Assembly: GCF_006345805.1 (NCBI RefSeq)
Contig: NW_021829440.1
Span: forward strand, 1 to 6,376
Direction of reading: 5' to 3'
Source of the DNA: Octopus sinensis
Taxonomy: Eukaryota
Length of the DNA stretch: 6,376 nt
Shown here: positions 355-5,780 of the stretch, piece after piece
How positions within the stretch are numbered: the first letter of the stretch is position 1
Layout of the letters: each line of letters starts with the position of its first letter
Translations under genes and position numbers: made by a program
Notes under the pieces: generated by a model
Seen by the model: the letters and a program-made list of their open reading frames with translations, nothing else
Told to the model about the DNA's origin: nothing
The model's database searches: none

Positions 355-579
355 TTGTTGTTGTTGTTGTTGTTGTGGAACCCCGGGGTCAATACTGATT
401 GAGAAGACCCCTGATCAGAGATATACCAGTCGTGATACATCCTGTCTTTTTAAATCTGCGTAAGACTACATTGTTCATTGTGGCATTCCCGTTTTTACAA
501 CAACTTGGTGTAATTTTGGGAGATTTGGCTGTTATTTCTAGTGACCACGTTGACACTTTTCTTGCTCCCTCGTTGACTC
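355..579 (-). mobile_element. Short non-autonomous retroposon, copy 1 (HDV-like head, (AAC)n tail)
   Basis: Plus strand: (GTT)n, then aacccc(g)gggtcaatactgat...agactaca...gtgtaattttgggagatttggctgttatttctag...ctccctcgttgactc. It is colinear with the copies at 581-775 and 973-1141. Read on the minus strand, it ends in (AAC)n. Confidence 0.7.
518..579 (-). ncRNA. Candidate HDV-like ribozyme, decayed (copy 1)
   Basis: Minus strand: GAGUCAAC GAGGGAG C[10-nt insert]UCAACGU GG UCAC[~9-nt deletion]UA GAAA UAACA GCCAA AU CUCCC. P2 GGGAG/CUCCC, an L3-like UCAACGU and a J4/2-like GCCAA are present. This copy is probably inactive. Confidence 0.5.
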
Positions 580-580
580 A

Positions 581-775
581 TGCTGTTGTTAACCCCAGGT
601 CAACAATGATCAAGCACATATATGATCAACAACATTCCTTCTATGTTTTGGCATTCTCTATTTAGGACTACAATATCCAATAGGTTCTCTCTTCTTTAGA
701 AATATTTGCGTGTGATTTTAGGGGTGTTAGGCTGCTATTTCTAACAGGTTGAGTAACGTAGAGAAACTCACTTAT
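581..775 (-). mobile_element. Short retroposon, copy 2, abutting copy 1 head-to-tail
   Basis: gctgttgttaaccccaggtcaacaatgatcaagcacatatatgatcaa...aggactacaatatccaat...gtgtgattttaggggtgttaggctgctatttctaacaggttgagtaacgtagag aligns colinearly with copy 1. The head reads UCUACGU..ACUC AACC UGUUA GAAA UAGCA GCCUAA on the minus strand. Confidence 0.65.
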
Positions 776-794
776 TTTCCTGAAGGGACTGATG

Positions 795-850
795 TGAGGC
801 GAGGTTTGGCTACTATCTCTAGTAGGTGGAGCCACTGCATACAGGCTCTG
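795..850 (-). ncRNA. Isolated HDV-like head fragment with compensated GNRA hairpin
   Basis: Minus strand: GAGCC UGUAUGC AG UGGCUC CACC UACUA GAGA UAGUA GCCAA ACCUCGCCUC. The P4 stem has a compensatory G-C to A-U change and keeps a GNRA loop. Confidence 0.5.
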
Positions 851-862
851 AATCTATCTTAT

Positions 863-948
863 GAGAAGTTTAGCTGTTGTTACTAGAAGATCGCAAGACC
901 GCATGGTGGGCTGGTTTAGTTACATCGAAGATGGCTCCTTGTTGACTT
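863..948 (-). ncRNA. Highly decayed HDV-like head fragment
   Basis: Minus strand: AAGUCAAC AAGGAG CC[insert]...GCC CACCAUGC GG UCUUGC GAUC UUCUA GUAA CAACA GCUAA ACUUCUC. The motif order matches the other heads, but the stems are poor. Confidence 0.35.
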
Positions 949-972
949 ACGAATTCTTCTCATTGGTCGATT

Positions 973-1141
973 TGTTGTTGCTGTTGTTGCTATTGCTGTT
1001 TAACCCCAGGTCGGCACTTATTTAGTCAAAGGCGTCTCAGTCATGACTGTTTTACCTTTCTCTGGAAAACTCTACTCTGAAGGAATTTTGGCAACAATAC
1101 TAGCAGGTCTACTAACCCCATAAAGGTCCACTCATTAGTTC
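973..1141 (-). mobile_element. Short retroposon, copy 3 (internally deleted), with HDV-like head at 1079-1141
   Basis: Plus strand: (GTT/GCT)n, then taaccccaggtcggcact...gtcaaaggcgtctcagtcatgac. Minus-strand head: GAACUAAU GAGUGGA CC UUUAUGG GG UUAGUA GACC UGCUA GUAU UGUU GCCAA AA UUCCUUC, with P1 ACUAA/UUAGU and P2 GAGUGGA/UUCCUUC. Confidence 0.6.
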
Positions 1142-1439
1142 AGGGAACCAGTTGAACTCGATGCTGCTGCTGCTGTTGCTTATCTAACACTCATCAATGT
1201 TACCTTGCTGTCTTTCAATTCAAAAAGACAGACAAGAGGTGTAAATAGTATTAGGACACGAACGGGGCAGAAGCTTTGTGAGATTAACCGCGAGGAGGGA
1301 AAAAAATCTCTTTGCCTCCAGAAGAATAGCTGTGTTGTTGTTGTTGTTGTTCTTATTATAGGCCCTAAGCACTTAAAAGAGTTTTGGTGCCCTTCAAACA
1401 CAAAGGATACAATCTTTTCCTTAACATATTCACATCATA

Positions 1440-1842
1440 GGCGCAGGAGTGGCGGGTGGTAGTAGCTTGCTAACCAACCACCATGGTTCCGGGTTCAGTC
1501 CCACGGCGTGGCACCTTGGGCAAGTGTCTTCTACTATAGCCTCGGGCCGACCAAGCCTTGTGAGTGGATTTGGTAGACGGAAACTGAAAGAAGCCTGTGT
1601 TATATGATATATATATATGCATGTGTGTGTGTGTTTGTGTGTCTTTGTTTGTCCCCCTAGCATTGCTTGACAACCGATGCTGGTGTGTTTACGTCCCCGT
1701 TCTTAGCGGTTCGCAAAGAGACCGATAGAATAAGTACTGGGCTTACAAAGAATAAGTCGGGGTCGATTTGCTCGACTAAAGGTGTGGTTGCTCCAGCATG
1801 GCCGCAGTCAAATGACTGAAACAAATAAAAGAGTAAAGAATA
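1440..1842 (+). mobile_element. Full-length tRNA-derived SINE (octopus-type, internal microsatellite)
   Basis: A-box-like TGGCGGGTGG (1450-1459) and B-box-like GGTTCAGTCCC (1492-1502), then a CORE/MIR-like ggcaccttgggcaagtgtctt. Internal (TA)/(TG) repeat; 3' end ccagcatggccgcagtcaaatgactgaaacaaataaaagagtaaaga. No clear TSD. Assignment to an octopus family is from recall. Confidence 0.9.
1450..1502 (+). promoter_or_regulatory. Internal Pol III promoter (A and B boxes) of the SINE
   Basis: TGGCGGGTGG and GGTTCAGTCCC at tRNA-like spacing. Confidence 0.7.
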
Positions 1843-1994
1843 TCAATAATGGAATTCAAAATATTTACTATAGTAGAACTAACAAGGTATGCATTATTCT
1901 CTAAACTCGTTCTGCCACGGATATGACAAAAGAAACAATGTAAATATTTTTTGAATTCCATTATAGAAGGAAATGGATGTATTCTATGTTTGAA

Positions 1995-2356
1995 GCATCT
2001 TAGGTCAAGTGTCTTAGCTCGGGCCAACCAAAACCTTATCAATGGATTTAGAAGAGAGAAGAAAGAGGCTCGTTGTACACACACACACACACAAACTCAG
2101 ACACACTCACACACGCACGCACACACACATGCACACACACACACACGCAGGCACACACACACACACACATACGCACGTACACACACACACACATACGCAC
2201 GTACACACACACACACACACACACACACAAAACGGAGCTTATGTGTACGTGTGTGTGTATCTGTGTATTCTTGTGTTTGTGTTTTGCCCCACCACCGTTT
2301 GATAAACGGTGTTGGCTTCTTTACGTCCCCGTATCTTAGCGCTCGGCAAAATGACC
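1995..2356 (+). mobile_element. Older, headless copy of the same SINE family
   Basis: gcatcttaggtcaagtgtctt-agctcgggccaaccaaaaccttatcaatggattt matches 1510-1573. ccaccaccgtttgataaacggtgttggc...tttacgtccccgtatcttagcgctcggcaaaatgacc matches 1655-1722. No A/B box is visible. Confidence 0.75.
2077..2229. repeat. Compound (CA)n microsatellite inside SINE copy 2
   Basis: ~150 bp of CA repeat, with a duplicated 24-bp higher-order unit (catacgcacgta at 2168 and 2192). Confidence 0.95.
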
Positions 2357-2374
2357 AAAACTATTGAAAGATAA

Positions 2375-2711
2375 TCATCATCATCTATGTTACGCCAGAC
2401 TTCACAGTCCATCATAGCATTACGGAGGTCCTGTTGCTGGATGCCTGTATCCCTGGAGATTACATCAGGGTAGGAGAGTGTGCGCCCTCTGGTATCGCGA
2501 GCAGATGGCTTCCAGAGGAGAAGAGTAGAAATTACCTCGTTTTCAGCTCTACAACAATGTCCAGCAAACTGGACTCTTCTACCTTTCACAAGAGATGACA
2601 CAGGTGGTAGTTTCCCATATATTTGCATTTTGGTTGGATGACGCTTCCACGAGAGATTTTGAGCTCTCATAAGGAGGTGAGTGTAAGTTCCATCCAACTG
2701 CCTCTCAAGCT
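2375..2711 (-). mobile_element. 5'-truncated RTE-like LINE, copy A, with 11-bp TSD
   Basis: Minus-strand translation LERQLDGTYTHLLMRAQNLSWKRHPTKMQIYGKLPP...VQFAGHCCR...RGRTLSYPDVISRDTG resembles the C-terminus of an RTE ORF. (GAT)n tail. TTGAAAGATAA is duplicated at 2364-2374 and 2712-2722. About 13 substitutions against copy B over ~310 bp (manual count). Confidence 0.9.
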
Positions 2712-2991
2712 TTGAAAGATAAAAGATATGTGTCATATATAAACATTAAACACACAAATATGTATGTATATGTTTACGTATGTATCAGTGGTGTGCAGTG
2801 ACTTCTGAGGTTGGTCATACAATAAATACTTATTGGTTGAGCCGAACCATTCTGAAATTATTTAACTAAAAGAACACATTTAGTTACGTAATATATAGCC
2901 ATGGTTTTAGACCATTGTGCTGTCAAAGACAACTCAGCTAATTTATCAGGTTCCTCGTCAATTTCGGGAAAATAATTGACACTCACTCGAG

Positions 2992-3181: not shown

Positions 3182-3522
3182 GTGAAGGCGCATGGCTCAC
3201 TGGTTAGAGCGTTGAGCTTACGATCGTGAGGTTGCGAGCTCGAATCCCGGACCGGGCTGCGTGTTGTGTTCTTGAGCAAGACACTTTATTTTACGTTGCT
3301 CCAGTTCACTCAGCTGTAGAAATGAGTTGCAACGTCACAGGTGCCAAGCTGTATCGGCCCTTGCCTTTCCCTTGGATAACACTGGTTGCGTGGAGAGAGG
3401 CGGCCGGTATGCATGGGCGACTGCTGGTCTTCCATAAACAACCTTGCCCGGACTTGTGCCTGGGAGGGTAACTTTCTAGGTGCAATCCCATGGTCATTCA
3501 TGACCGAAGGGAGTCTCAGAAT
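3182..3522 (+). mobile_element. tRNA-derived SINE (second family) inserted in the hAT transposase
   Basis: A box TGGCTCACTGG (3193-3203) and B-box-like AGCTCGAATCCC (3237-3248), then gtgttgtgttcttgagcaagacact. Possible decayed TSD ttaaaacatt (3172-3181) / ttaatgcatt (3523-3532), 8/10 matching. The hAT frame stops and resumes at its edges. Confidence 0.9.
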
Positions 3523-4178
3523 TTAATGCATTAGCCCTTTTCGGTGATTTCGTAAAAAATGTGCCTAGTCCATTTATTGTAGAAAAAAATATCTGACATT
3601 CTTTCATAGCAGAGCATGATTGTGAAAGAACAAGAATTTAGGATATGAGCATAACAATGAATAAAGATCGCACATTCATATTTCTTTCTTACATTTGACT
3701 GTGAATCATTTAATTGTCCTGCTATTGTAGCGGTACCATCATTGGTTTGTGCAATCAATTTGTTTCCACATTTCCACGTTTCAATGCTTTTAAAAACATG
3801 TTCAGATAAAGCATCTGCAGATCGATCTGCACAAGCATAATTAAAACTAATAAATCGTTATTTCGTAACACAATCTTTTGTAACATAACATAAAACAGTT
3901 GACAATTGTGAAGATGCCGATAAATCAGATGTTTCATCAACAAAATTAACAACGGATGTGGTTTAATTAAGTTAATTTTGTATTTCATACAACATAACCT
4001 TTTGAACTGCATCAATCAAGTCATTTTGAATTCTGTTTGAGAGGTAGAGGCTGTGTCTAGATGGGTTGCTGATTAAATATAAGAGTTCTTTATAATTTCC
4101 ACGATTATTAGATTCTTCAGATTCAAAATGACCCCAAAATGATAATTCCTGACAACCTAAAAAAATAACTACATCGAT
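3523..4178 (-). pseudogene. hAT transposase core (DUF4371-like region and DDE motifs)
   Basis: One frame with 3 stops: IDVVIFLGCQELSFWGHFESEESNNRGNYKELL...YLSNRIQNDLI...VDETSDLSASSQLS (first D, 3924-3938)...RFISF...IAQTNDGT (second D)...HCYAH (3645-3659). After a 1-nt frameshift: LNLVLSQSCSAMKECQIFFSTINGLGTFFTKSPKRANALN. Confidence 0.9.
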
Positions 4179-4454
4179 CGGCATTCCTTCGATATAGCTC
4201 GACAAGGTCGAGACATTTCACTTCGGGTATTTCCGTGGGTTTGTGGAGTAAAGATATAACGAAATTATGCCAGCAATGTCTCATTTGAAACTTGAAGTAA
4301 AAAAACCTTGCGTATTTGTTCTTACCTGCTTCATGTGTGGATGTAAAATCCGCAAATTTCCCAGCAGAAAACAGAATCGAACTGTCATTTGCTTTCACGG
4401 AAGTACCCGAAGTGAAGTGTTTTGATTTTGTCGAGTTATATCGAAAGAATTCCC
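4179..4454. mobile_element. 276-bp MITE with ~59-bp TIRs flanked by ATCGAT
   Basis: Gapless inverted arms 4173-4237 and 4396-4460 match 55/65, counting the palindromic ATCGAT. Removing the element and one ATCGAT restores the in-frame hAT sequence CGA TTG ATC GAT GTA GTT (RLIDVV). Confidence 0.8.
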
Positions 4455-4469
4455 ATCGATCAATCGTCA

Positions 4470-4982
4470 CATCATCATCATCATCGTTCGACCGTGGTCG
4501 AGACAATGGAATTTACCATGCTACGCCAGACTTCACGGTCCATCATAGCATTACGGAGGTCCTGTTGCTGGATGCCTGTATCCCTGGAGATTACATCAGG
4601 GTAGGAGAGTGTGCGCCCTCTGGTGTTGCGAGTAGATGGCTTCCAGAGGGGAAGAGTAGAAATTACCTCGTTTTCAGCTCTACAACAATGTCCAGCAAAC
4701 TGGACAAGAGATAACACAGGTGGTAGTTTCCCATATATTTGCATTTTGGTTGGATGACGCTTCCACGAAAAATTTTGAGCTCTCATAAGGAGGCGAGTGT
4801 AGGTTCCATCCAACCGCCTCTCAAGCATCTTTGATAACGTCCAGGTTTCTGAGCCATATAGTAGAATTGTTTCGACTGTGGCTTTGAAGATTTCAAGTTT
4901 GAAGTCTCCACTTAGATTTGATGACCAGATCTTATGCATGTCATTATAGGCTGACCAGGCCATACCCTTTCTAGTTAGAAAA
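4470..4982 (-). mobile_element. 5'-truncated RTE-like LINE, copy B, inserted in the hAT
   Basis: LTRKGMAWSAYNDMHKIWSS...FKATVETILLYGSETWTL...QFAGHCCR...VSTTVER* runs directly into a (GAT)n tail. It has an in-frame 15-bp deletion (KGRRV) relative to copy A. No TSD; the flanks rejoin as hAT K-I-L-*-R-L-I-D. Confidence 0.9.
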
Positions 4983-5535: not shown

Positions 5536-5780
5536 CACGGAAATATGGCGTAGTGGTTAAGAGCGCGGGCTACTAACCCCAAGATCCGAGTTAACAACAA
5601 CAACAACATATTGGAAAATACCTTAGGAATGAGAACCCAGGTTCCAAAATTTCCCCAAGACACCTGAAGAAGGCTGGAGGGTGTATCAGCTGAAACGTTG
5701 TGTTAACAACAAACAAGATGAGGACAAATATCCGTCAAATGTAAATAATGTACATAATTCCTCATCTCTTAAATATAGAA
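5536..5780 (+). mobile_element. tRNA-headed, hammerhead-containing short element (SINE/PLE-pLTR chimera)
   Basis: A box TGGCGTAGTGG (5546-5556), D-arm/anticodon-like ttaagagcgcgggctactaacccc, and a B box cut off after GAGTT (5588-5592) by an (AAC)n run. Hammerhead at 5659-5704 and a 3' hairpin AGATGAGGA (5716-5724) / TCCTCATCT (5759-5767). Confidence 0.8.
5659..5704 (+). ncRNA. Minimal type I hammerhead ribozyme (PLE type)
   Basis: Stem I GACAC/GUGUU; core CUGAAGA (5664-5670) plus one extra A; stem II GGCUGG/UCAGCU; GAA followed by palindromic ACGU in place of stem III; predicted cleavage after U5699. Confidence 0.75.

What the first reader, a model, noticed from the sequence alone, without database searches (positions are those of the whole stretch)
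355..1141. Short (AAC)n-tailed retroposon headed by an HDV-like ribozyme fold
Seen: five diverged minus-strand heads give a by-eye consensus GAGYCAAY GAGGGAG CC UCUACGU GG UYRCUC GACC UGCUA-GAAA-UAGCA GCCAA AU CUCCCUC. This follows HDV nested-pseudoknot order: P1, P2, P3, L3, P3', P1', P4, J4/2 with a candidate catalytic C in GCCAA/GCUAA, then P2'. Pairing covaries between copies: P1 GAGU/AC(U) versus ACUAA/UUAGU, P2 G-C versus A-U, and P4 UGCUA/UAGCA versus UACUA/UAGUA. The P4 loop stays GNRA (GAAA, GAGA, GUAA) in four of the five heads. The element's 5' end coincides with the predicted G1 cleavage position. Established: HDV-like ribozymes head R2, RTE and L1Tc/ingi elements; as I recall, the Drosophila R2 ribozyme has CC-UCCUCGU-GG and UGCUA..UAGCA-GCUAA. 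Inference: this is a ~200-bp non-coding retroposon with no Pol III boxes whose 5' end is made by self-cleavage. I do not know of one described in cephalopods. No single copy here is intact, P3 is only 2 bp, and P1.1 is not canonical.
Basis: partly seen in the sequence, partly recalled or inferred. Interest (0 to 1): 0.8.

Follow-up and report, generated by a model that had tools for sequence, protein, structure and literature searches.

The report
Decayed (AAC)n-tailed retroposon stack, ribozyme unproven
This stretch holds three old, head-to-tail copies of a short non-coding retroposon that ends in a small hairpin plus an (AAC)n repeat, but the proposed self-cleaving HDV-like ribozyme at its 5' end has no support beyond what chance gives, so on present evidence it is an ordinary decayed repeat.

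Summary
Real: on the minus strand, 355-1160 holds three related, diverged short elements in head-to-tail order (A 355-579, B 580-971, C 972-1160). Each ends in a GACC-N3-4-GGTT stem-loop followed by (AAC)n. A 55-75 nt "head" unit recurs five times.

Not supported: the HDV-like ribozyme.
- Rfam gives no ribozyme match, even at E<=10.
- RNAalifold predicts no conserved base pair.
Shuffled partners give 61.7% (130 of 500 shuffles are as high).
- Only head C can adopt the fold, and 44% of its own shuffles score as well.
- No head matches the R2 core CCUCCUCGUGG within 3 mismatches.
- The consensus is chimeric. Picking any observed letter per column pairs 19/19 model pairs, but also 13-18/19 arbitrarily slid pairs.
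- An unbiased plurality consensus folds into two plain hairpins.
- The head is tandemly repeated at least 3.5 times inside B.
- In C and B the proposed G1 lies about 18-23 nt inside the element.

No further genomic copies could be retrieved, so an intact ribozyme in younger copies is not excluded (about 8%). Short HDV-ribozyme-headed non-autonomous elements are already known (R2 SIDEs, NARTc/SIDER). Interest is low.

The parts
355..579 (-). Element A (225 nt). It reads 5' GAGTCAAC..., then one head unit, a body, a stem-loop, and (AAC)7.
   Evidence: Sequence. Body similarity to B is z=3.4.
355..376 (-). (AAC)7 tail of A
   Evidence: TRF: period 3, 7.3 copies, 100% matches.
379..390 (-). 3' stem-loop core of A (GACCCCGGGGTT)
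   Evidence: (D10). It lies within the predicted fold of the A tail segment, which is no more stable than its shuffles (z=-0.42).
509..579 (-). Head unit A. The 5' GAGTCAAC-GAGGGAG and the 3' GCCAAAT-CTCCC are kept. The middle is disrupted, with no P3 or P1' partner, and the P4 stem is only 2 bp.
580..971 (-). Element B (about 392 nt). Its 5' end reads ATCGACC.... It holds at least 3.5 tandem head sub-units, a body, two 3' hairpins, and the tail AACAACAGCAT.
586..606 (-). 3' hairpin of B (UUGUUGACC-UGG-GGUUAACAA, 9 bp), directly abutting the tail
   Evidence: MFE -13.7 kcal/mol for the 51-nt tail segment, z=-1.81.
712..790 (-). Head B3. It has hairpin UGAGU/ACUCA (750-770) and hairpin CUGUUA-GAAA-UAGCAG (732-747). 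There is no separate P1 or P2 5' strand.
795..862 (-). Head B2. It has hairpin GAGCC/GGCUC (829-848) and hairpin CUACUA-GAGA-UAGUAG (810-825). There is no separate P1 or P2 5' strand.
863..948 (-). Head B1. It is about 1.5 sub-units: AAGTCAAC-AAGGAG-CC..., then a second partial unit whose core is at 859-910. P4 is broken.
   Evidence: the profile hit runs 910 to 859.
972..1160 (-). Element C (about 190 nt). Its 5' end reads (AT)CGAGTTCAAC.... It has one head unit, a body, GACCTGGGGTT, and an impure (AAC/AGC)n tail.
1075..1141 (-).
   Evidence: score 35 versus 32.9+-5.4 for shuffles, and 44% of shuffles are as good.
1142..1160 (-). GAGTTCAAC (1151-1159) is the homologue of A's 5' terminus and forms a local hairpin with UGAACU.
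1161..1352 (-). Unit D. It lies between (AAC)6 (1333-1351) and (AGC)n (1162-1180). It is not significantly related to A, B or C. It holds CCTCCTCGCGG at 1288-1298 and a strong hairpin at 1208-1231.

Best explanation
Minus strand 355-1160 is a head-to-tail stack of three old, diverged copies of a short non-autonomous non-LTR retroposon (SINE-like, with no recognisable Pol III head).

Shown:
- The copies share a 3' module, a GACC-N3-4-GGUU stem-loop directly followed by (AAC)n.
- They share a body.
- They share a 5' terminus of the type AT(C)GAGT(T)CAAC.
- Their 5' region is built from a variable number of a 55-75 nt sub-repeat: one in A, one plus a fragment in C, and at least 3.5 in B.

Inferred mechanism: the RNA is copied in trans by the reverse transcriptase of a 'stringent' LINE that recognises the 3' stem-loop plus the trinucleotide repeat. 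The (AAC)n end anneals to nicked (TTG)n DNA, so new copies land in existing (AAC)n tracts, including the tails of older copies. That would produce the head-to-tail stack with a microsatellite at every junction.

The head sub-repeat shows at most two local hairpins in its best-kept copies (B2, B3). Nothing in the data requires it to be a ribozyme. It may be a LINE 5'-UTR-derived or otherwise structured module whose function is not established.
For: - 3' module and tails: (D10, D16).
- Relatedness of bodies: A-B z=3.4, B-C z=3.6. Relatedness of heads: z up to 7.3.
- Same strand and order, with a microsatellite at each junction.
- Similar 5' termini after CAGCAT/CAAAT.
- An independent site at 5538-5605 (+) shows GAGTTAAC(AAC)5 closing a tRNA-like fragment. 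So GTTAAC(AAC)n behaves as a 3' tail in this genome (direct reading).
- No ORF with family matches in the region.
- Tandem nature of the head.
- Plurality consensus folds as two simple hairpins at -17.1 kcal/mol.
- No ribozyme signal.
Against: - No target-site duplications can be read, because the flanks are microsatellite.
- No second locus of the family was found in the window, and none could be retrieved from the collections searched. Multi-copy status and the LINE partner are therefore inferred, not shown.
- In a head-to-tail array the microsatellite could formally be assigned to either strand. The minus orientation rests on the hairpin-then-repeat order and on the 5538-5605 analogue.
- The two-hairpin model itself has no statistical support across the five heads: 58% paired versus 60% in shuffles.
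- Copies are too decayed (59-77% to any consensus) to exclude a lost function.
Confidence: 0.6

Rival explanations
1. Reader's model. The family's intact master copies carry an HDV-like self-cleaving ribozyme at the 5' end. It trims read-through transcripts exactly at G1, as in R2, R4/Dong, RTE, L1Tc and their short derivatives. The copies here are simply too decayed to show it.
For: - Elements that live inside repeats and lack a promoter are the kind that use such ribozymes. Dong, in (TAA)n, has an active HDV-like ribozyme at its 5' end (PMC3774820).
- A, B1 and C have a 5-6 bp long-range complement (GGGAG/CUCCC type) with one compensatory change (direct reading; helix 3 is 83% paired).
- Head C can be drawn in the correct strand order.
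- The fold tolerates much variation: a 4-bp P1, absent P4, and P3 mismatches are documented in PMC3774820.
Against: - No Rfam match.
- Pairing and covariation are at shuffle level, and RNAalifold finds nothing.
- C's fold is matched by 44% of its shuffles. A and B1 have no solution, and the other units only chance-level folds in other registers.
- A topology-only descriptor hits 54 times in this 1 kb, so a fit is uninformative.
- The R2 L3/P3 core is absent from all heads. L3 of C has no C.
- J1/4 is 4-5 nt, against 0-2 in R2.
- The 'P1' 5' strand GAGUCAAC is a direct repeat of the ACUCAAC segment it should pair with.
- Three and a half heads in tandem inside B are hard to reconcile with efficient 5' self-cleavage.
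- G1 is internal in B and C, and CAGCAT is shared upstream of G1 in A and C.
Confidence: 0.08
2. The array is a DNA-level tandem duplication: a minisatellite-like repeat of a composite unit (head, body, hairpin, microsatellite) expanded by unequal exchange or replication slippage. It is not three independent retrotranspositions.
For: - Strict head-to-tail order.
- Junction similarity extends across the supposed element boundary: CAGCAT + GAGT(T)CAAC in both A and C.
- Sub-repeats are tandem inside B.
- No other copy occurs in the window or in any collection searched.
Against: - Unit lengths differ greatly (225, 392, 190 nt).
- Identity between units is low and uneven, unlike a homogenised array.
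- The hairpin-then-trinucleotide-repeat end is the classic signature of a reverse-transcribed 3' end.
- A similar GTTAAC(AAC)n end closes an unrelated tRNA-like fragment at 5538-5605.
Confidence: 0.15
3. A, B and C are 5'-truncated 3' ends of an autonomous LINE whose 3' UTR contains the 55-75 nt tandem repeat. There is no separate short element.
For: - Most LINE copies are short 3' fragments.
- Lengths differ between copies.
- Variable tandem repeats are common in LINE UTRs.
- The heads are internal in B.
Against: A, B and C begin with similar sequences, AT(C)GA(G).... Random truncation would not give that. No reverse-transcriptase remnant with this tail is present in the window; the only LINE remnants are RTE-type with a (GAT)n tail.
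Confidence: 0.12

Closest known systems
Stringent-type SINE/LINE 3' ends (stem-loop plus short tandem repeat, as in UnaL2/UnaSINE and CR1/L2-type tails; my knowledge of Kajikawa and Okada 2002, cited in PMC4758252)
   Same: A conserved small hairpin is followed directly by a 3-nt repeat at the 3' end. The elements are short and non-coding, and the tail motif is shared with another element in the same window.
   Different: No LINE partner was identified. No Pol III (tRNA/5S/7SL) head is present. Copy number is unknown.
LP-SINEs of molluscs (short retroposons with a LINE-5'-UTR-derived head in place of a tRNA head; PMC4758252)
   Same: The host is a mollusc. The element is a short retroposon without Pol III boxes, with a non-tRNA 5' module.
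   Different: No LINE 5' UTR is available to compare with the head. The head here is a variable tandem sub-repeat.
R2 SIDEs, and NARTc/RIME/SIDER (short non-autonomous elements headed by a tested HDV-like ribozyme; PMC3414825, PMC4035085, PMC3383444)
   Different: Those ribozymes fold with compensatory changes in P1-P4, keep the L3/P3/P1.1 core, sit at the exact 5' end, and cleave in vitro. None of the features testable here is met.
Dong (R4 clade), a LINE specific for (TAA)n microsatellites with an active 5' HDV-like ribozyme (PMC3774820)
   Same: The element is flanked on both sides by a trinucleotide microsatellite that also forms its tail.
   Different: No coding element is present. Dong's published 5' 18-mer has no match within 3 mismatches. 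No ribozyme was demonstrated.

Membership tests
HDV-like self-cleaving ribozyme | Nested double-pseudoknot strand order: P1-P2-P3-L3-P3'-P1'-(P1.1)-P4-J4/2-P2', all present in one molecule | tested here: not met
A and B1 have no solution; B2 and B3 give only unrelated chance-level folds.
HDV-like self-cleaving ribozyme | P1 of about 6-7 bp that starts at the cleavage site and pairs with the 7 nt right after P3 (PMC3774820) | tested here: not met
   A has no partner. B1 has 3 bp. In B2 and B3 the 'P1'' strand pairs with the adjacent GAG in a plain hairpin. C has 5-6 A-U-rich bp starting 20 nt inside the element. Helix 1 is 63% paired on the alignment and is not distinguishable from shuffles.
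HDV-like self-cleaving ribozyme | P3 (3 bp) plus L3 with the conserved C and G, and a P1.1 pairing (the roughly 15-nt conserved core; R2 version CCUCCUCGUGG) | tested here: not met
   No head matches within 3 mismatches. P3 columns are 33% paired. L3 of C lacks C. The only near-match (1 mismatch, 1288-1298) is in unrelated unit D, without P1 or P2 partners in the right order.
HDV-like self-cleaving ribozyme | P2 of at least 5 bp closing the fold, and a catalytic C in J4/2 | tested here: inconclusive
   GGGAG/CUCCC (A), AGGAG/CUUCU (B1) and GAG-GGA/UCC-UUC (C) exist, and GCCAA/GCUAA precedes them. The 5' strand is absent in B2 and B3. The same pairing fits an ordinary three-way junction equally well.
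HDV-like self-cleaving ribozyme | Significant covariation across family members | tested here: not met
   Covariation score is 0.221 versus 0.193+-0.033 in shuffles (105/500 as high). RNAalifold gives 0 pairs. Only five decayed sequences were available, so power is low.
HDV-like self-cleaving ribozyme | Match to curated covariance models (HDV, CPEB3, drz families in Rfam 15) | tested here: not met
   No such match at E<=10 in the window or in 300-1400. Rfam models do not encode the pseudoknot, and to my knowledge include no R2-type family, so this is weak evidence.
HDV-like self-cleaving ribozyme | Self-cleavage that is abolished by mutating the catalytic C | not testable with these tools
   This is a bench assay.
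Ribozyme-headed non-LTR element (R2/R4/RTE/L1Tc type and their SIDEs) | The ribozyme sits at the exact 5' end of the element | tested here: not met
   True only for A. The heads are internal in B (23 nt in, plus B2 and B3) and in C (18 nt in).
Non-autonomous non-LTR retroposon (SINE-like) | 3' end made of a simple repeat, preceded by a conserved recognition module | tested here: met
   The GACC-N3-4-GGTT stem-loop followed by (AAC)n occurs in A, B and C.
Non-autonomous non-LTR retroposon (SINE-like) | Defined common 5' end | tested here: inconclusive
   AT-GAGTCAAC (A), ATCGAGTTCAAC (C) and ATCGACC... (B) are similar, but there are only three junctions and all lie in microsatellite.
Non-autonomous non-LTR retroposon (SINE-like) | Target-site duplications and dispersed multiple copies | not testable with these tools
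   The flanks are microsatellite. No host genome was searchable, and viral, metagenome and protein-based searches found nothing.
Non-autonomous non-LTR retroposon (SINE-like) | Internal Pol III promoter (tRNA, 5S or 7SL-derived head), as required for a classical SINE | tested here: not met
   ARAGORN finds none. There is no tRNA, 5S or 7SL match in Rfam at E<=10. It is therefore 'SINE-like' and not a classical SINE.

The most novel reading that the evidence does not exclude
Young, intact copies of this family elsewhere in the genome carry a working HDV-like ribozyme at the 5' end of an (AAC)n-microsatellite-targeting short retroposon. That would be a cephalopod counterpart of R2 SIDEs and Dong. 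The tandem heads would then be duplicated ribozyme relics.
Probability: 0.08. Interest if true: 0.5.

Novelty: new member of a known kind. Interest (0 to 1): 0.2.

Why it matters
As it stands, this is routine repeat annotation: an uncharacterised, decayed, microsatellite-tailed short retroposon in a repeat-rich (apparently cephalopod) genome.

If the ribozyme reading were later confirmed on young copies, it would extend ribozyme-processed non-autonomous retroposons to cephalopods. It would also show how promoter-less short elements in microsatellites obtain defined 5' ends. The principle is already established in insects and trypanosomatids, so the gain would be incremental.

A methodological point is worth keeping. 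A by-eye consensus assembled from five copies at about 70% identity can be made to satisfy almost any pseudoknot: 19/19 pairs for the model, against 13-18/19 for slid controls.

Tried and rejected
1. Collecting genomic copies.
- Exact tail 20-mer in IMG/VR: 0 hits.
- Tail 17-mer in JGI metagenomes: 7 hits, all unrelated bacterial-looking contigs with no head or repeat context.
- Protein search with the 88-aa chance ORF spanning A's head: none.
- Exact look-up of the window's RTE ORF: not on record.
- Homologues of that RTE fragment led to three long ENA contigs (L001-L003). They share only the RTE at 70-74% nt identity and none of the window's repeats, so they come from another organism. Profile searches found no family copy in them.
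- Expected yield was near zero.

2. Rfam at permissive thresholds returned only microsatellite-driven miRNA noise.

3. Unit D's CCTCCTCGCGG as the 'real' ribozyme core. It sits in the loop of a plain hairpin, GAGAUU...AAUCUC, with no P2 or P1 in HDV order. The candidate P2' is sequestered in a strong local hairpin (1208-1231). Its descriptor score is at shuffle level.

4. Dong's 5' end. Its 18-mer has no match within 3 mismatches. A 10-nt identity (CCCTAAAATC) to B3 seen by eye is AT-rich, and I treat it as chance.

5. The idea that the heads are antisense tRNA-SINE pieces. C(+) versus 5566-5590 gives z=3.7, and A(+) versus the SINE body at 3267-3322 gives z=4.3. The matches are short, partly palindromic, not found by the profile search, and not significant after 36 comparisons.

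6. The unit at 5601-5705 (+) as a further family member: z<1.

7. A two-hairpin consensus model as a positive alternative also lacks statistical support.
Full report
ANATOMY

Read on the minus strand, 1352 to 355 is a run of units separated by trinucleotide microsatellites:
- (AAC)6 at 1333-1351
- unit D, 1181-1332
- (AGC)n at 1162-1180
- element C, 972-1160, including an impure (AAC/AGC)n tail at 972-1000
- element B, 580-971, ending in the tail AACAACAGCAT
- element A, 355-579, ending in (AAC)7 at 355-376

A, B and C share a 3' module. Its core is GACC-N3-4-GGTT (379-390, 591-601, 1002-1012). In B this core is a 9-bp hairpin that abuts the tail (z=-1.81). Their bodies are related: A-B z=3.4 and B-C z=3.6 against dinucleotide shuffles. 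D is not significantly related to them.

The region has only chance ORFs with no family match. It has no tRNA-like head (searches show no tRNA, 5S or 7SL match).

THE HEADS

The repeated head is real but uneven.
- A, B2 and B3 are clearly homologous over the core CTAGARATARYAGCCWAA and its flanks (z=5.0-7.3).
- B1 resembles only A (z=3.0), and C only B2 (z=2.4).
- The unit is a tandem sub-repeat. B carries B1, B2 and B3 in direct succession, and B1 itself holds about 1.5 units (profile hit 910 to 859).
- In the two best-kept copies, B2 and B3, thermodynamic folding gives two adjacent plain hairpins. These are GAGCC/GGCUC or UGAGU/ACUCA, followed by CUNNUA-GARA-UANNAG. In both copies the MFE is no lower than that of their shuffles (z=+0.19 and -0.98).

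TESTS OF THE HDV-LIKE FOLD

(a) Rfam 15 with permissive filters gave no HDV, CPEB3, drz or any other ribozyme match at E<=10. This holds for the whole window and for 300-1400 alone.

(b) I searched for the most conserved R2 ribozyme string, CCUCCUCGUGG (quoted in PMC5035012). No head matches within 3 mismatches.

(c) I wrote a relaxed descriptor:
- P1 5-7 bp
- P2 at least 4 bp
- P3 2-3 bp
- L3 5-10 nt
- P4 optional
- a C in J4/2

C scores 35 against 32.9+-5.4 for its own shuffles, and 44% of those shuffles score as high. A and B1 still have no solution, and B2, B3 and D give only chance-level folds in other registers. A topology-only descriptor hits 183+135 times in the window and 54 times in this 1 kb. 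Being able to draw the topology therefore carries no information.

It pairs 64% of cells, against 61.7+-2.7% when 3' letters are shuffled (130/500 as high). Covariation is 0.221 against 0.193+-0.033 (105/500). The P3 columns are 33% paired. The structure was derived from one of the rows, which inflates the observed value.

(e) RNAalifold predicts zero consensus pairs on the five heads and on the four best cores.

If one may pick any letter seen in a column, all 19 model pairs can be made. So can 13-18 of 19 pairs when the partners are slid by 1-4 columns. The fit is therefore a product of the freedom in building a chimeric consensus.

(g) The unbiased plurality consensus folds as two simple hairpins at -17.1 kcal/mol. 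In that fold the supposed P1' strand (UUACUC) pairs with the adjacent GAGUGA, the supposed P2 strand. That two-hairpin model is not statistically supported either (58% against 60%). No structure can be established from these copies.

POSITION OF THE HEAD

An HDV-like ribozyme cleaves immediately 5' of P1 (PMC3774820). Only in A does the head start at the junction.
The real homologue of A's GAGTCAAC is GAGTTCAAC at 1151-1159.
- In B the first head starts 23 nt after the junction, and two more heads follow.
- The two clean junctions read CAGCAT|GAGTCAAC and CAGCAT|C|GAGTTCAAC, so similarity continues 6 nt upstream of G1.
- The 5' GAGUCAAC is a direct repeat of the ACUCAAC segment it is supposed to pair with.
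- Tandem heads inside one copy are hard to reconcile with efficient self-cleavage, which would remove the upstream ones from the RNA template.

- A, B1 and C have a 5-6 bp long-range complement of the GGGAG/CUCCC type, with one G-C to A-U compensation. B2 and B3 show one compensation in the second hairpin.
- Elements that live in repeats and lack promoters do use such ribozymes. Dong, in (TAA)n, has an active one at its 5' end.
- R2 ribozymes tolerate a 4-bp P1, no P4 and P3 mismatches.
- The long-range pairing is equally compatible with a plain three-way junction, however, and five decayed copies give little power.
- I put the ribozyme reading at about 8%.

RELATED SEQUENCES

I could not obtain other copies of the family.
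- Exact-pattern scans of viral contigs and JGI metagenome contigs gave nothing or chance bacterial hits.
- A protein-level search with the ORF spanning A gave nothing.
- Contigs reached through the window's RTE fragment belong to another organism. They share only the RTE, at 70-74% identity, and contain no family copy.
- The decisive test, a consensus of young copies, therefore remains undone.

BEST EXPLANATION

Shown: three related short non-coding elements with a conserved stem-loop-plus-(AAC)n 3' end, similar 5' termini, and a variable tandem sub-repeat in the 5' half. They are stacked head to tail with a microsatellite at each junction.

Inferred:
- They are non-autonomous non-LTR retroposons.
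- They are copied by a stringent-type LINE reverse transcriptase that recognises the 3' hairpin and repeat.
- Priming on (TTG)n DNA directs new copies into older tails.

A GAGTTAAC(AAC)5 end that closes a tRNA-like fragment at 5538-5605 (+) shows the same tail type in use elsewhere in the window.

Rivals:
- single-locus DNA-level tandem duplication (0.15)
- 5'-truncated LINE 3' UTR fragments (0.12)

COMPARISON WITH KNOWN FAMILIES AND NOVELTY

The 3' architecture works like stringent SINE/LINE tails. The lack of a Pol III head recalls mollusc LP-SINEs (PMC4758252). Short elements headed by tested HDV-like ribozymes already exist: R2 SIDEs (PMC3414825) and NARTc/SIDER (PMC4035085).

Verdict: a real but ordinary decayed retroposon cluster, with the ribozyme not supported. 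Interest is 0.2.

Noticed in passing
window 1288-1298 (-), within 1181-1332: CCTCCTCGCGG is one mismatch from the conserved R2 ribozyme core CCUCCUCGUGG. I estimate about 0.1 such matches expected per window. It sits in the loop of a plain hairpin, GAGAUU...AAUCUC, in unit D, next to the finding and on the same strand. No P1 or P2 partners lie in HDV order, and the descriptor score is at shuffle level.
   Followed up: yes
window 2373-2736 (-) and 4468-4981 (-): Two 3'-terminal fragments of an RTE-type LINE: reverse-transcriptase C-terminus, a weak PF20049 hit, and a (GAT)n-type tail. They are 95-97% identical to each other over 188+123 nt, with a 15-nt indel. Relatives reach up to 87% aa identity in ENA assemblies. 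The tail differs from the (AAC)n family, so this LINE is not its partner.
   Followed up: partly
window 5538-5605 (+): A tRNA-like fragment with an A-box-like TAGTGGTTAAGAGCG and an anticodon-loop-like CTACTAA. It is cut short at GAGTT and followed by AAC(AAC)5. The GTTAAC(AAC)n end resembles the 3' end of elements A-C. A second GTTAACAACAAAC end lies at about 5700-5718.
   Followed up: partly
window 3186-3520 (+), 1440-1780 (+), 1985-2360 (+): Apparently tRNA-derived SINE-like repeats (by eye; ARAGORN and Rfam detect no tRNA in them). The two at 1440 and 1985 share a body interrupted by long (GT)n/(CA)n tracts. The body of the 3186 copy (3267-3322) shows weak similarity to head A on the plus strand (z=4.3) and, in the other orientation, to B3 (z=3.6). 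This is probably chance or palindromy.
   Followed up: partly
window 4173-4237 and 4396-4460: 65-nt inverted repeat arms, 85% complementary and 158 nt apart. This is a MITE-like or foldback element, lying beside the second RTE fragment.
   Followed up: no
window 3972-4205 (-): A decayed transposase-like remnant. The 77-aa ORF at 3972-4205 has a sub-threshold match to DUF4371 (E=3e-5; 24.5 bits, below the 32.1-bit cut-off). By eye, a hAT-like motif (FIHCYAHILNS) sits in the adjacent ORF at 3531-3758, which has no Pfam hit.
   Followed up: partly
window 1208-1231 (-): A perfect 8-bp hairpin, CUGUCUUU-UUGAAUUG-AAAGACAG, inside unit D.
   Followed up: no
L001-L003 (ENA assemblies ERZ25072740, ERZ26222911): Long contigs in metagenome assemblies that are clearly animal DNA (RTE-type LINE, RVT_1/Exo_endo_phos_2, rve, zinc-finger ORFs). 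They come from an organism other than the window's source. They share only the RTE, at 70-74% nt identity.
   Followed up: partly
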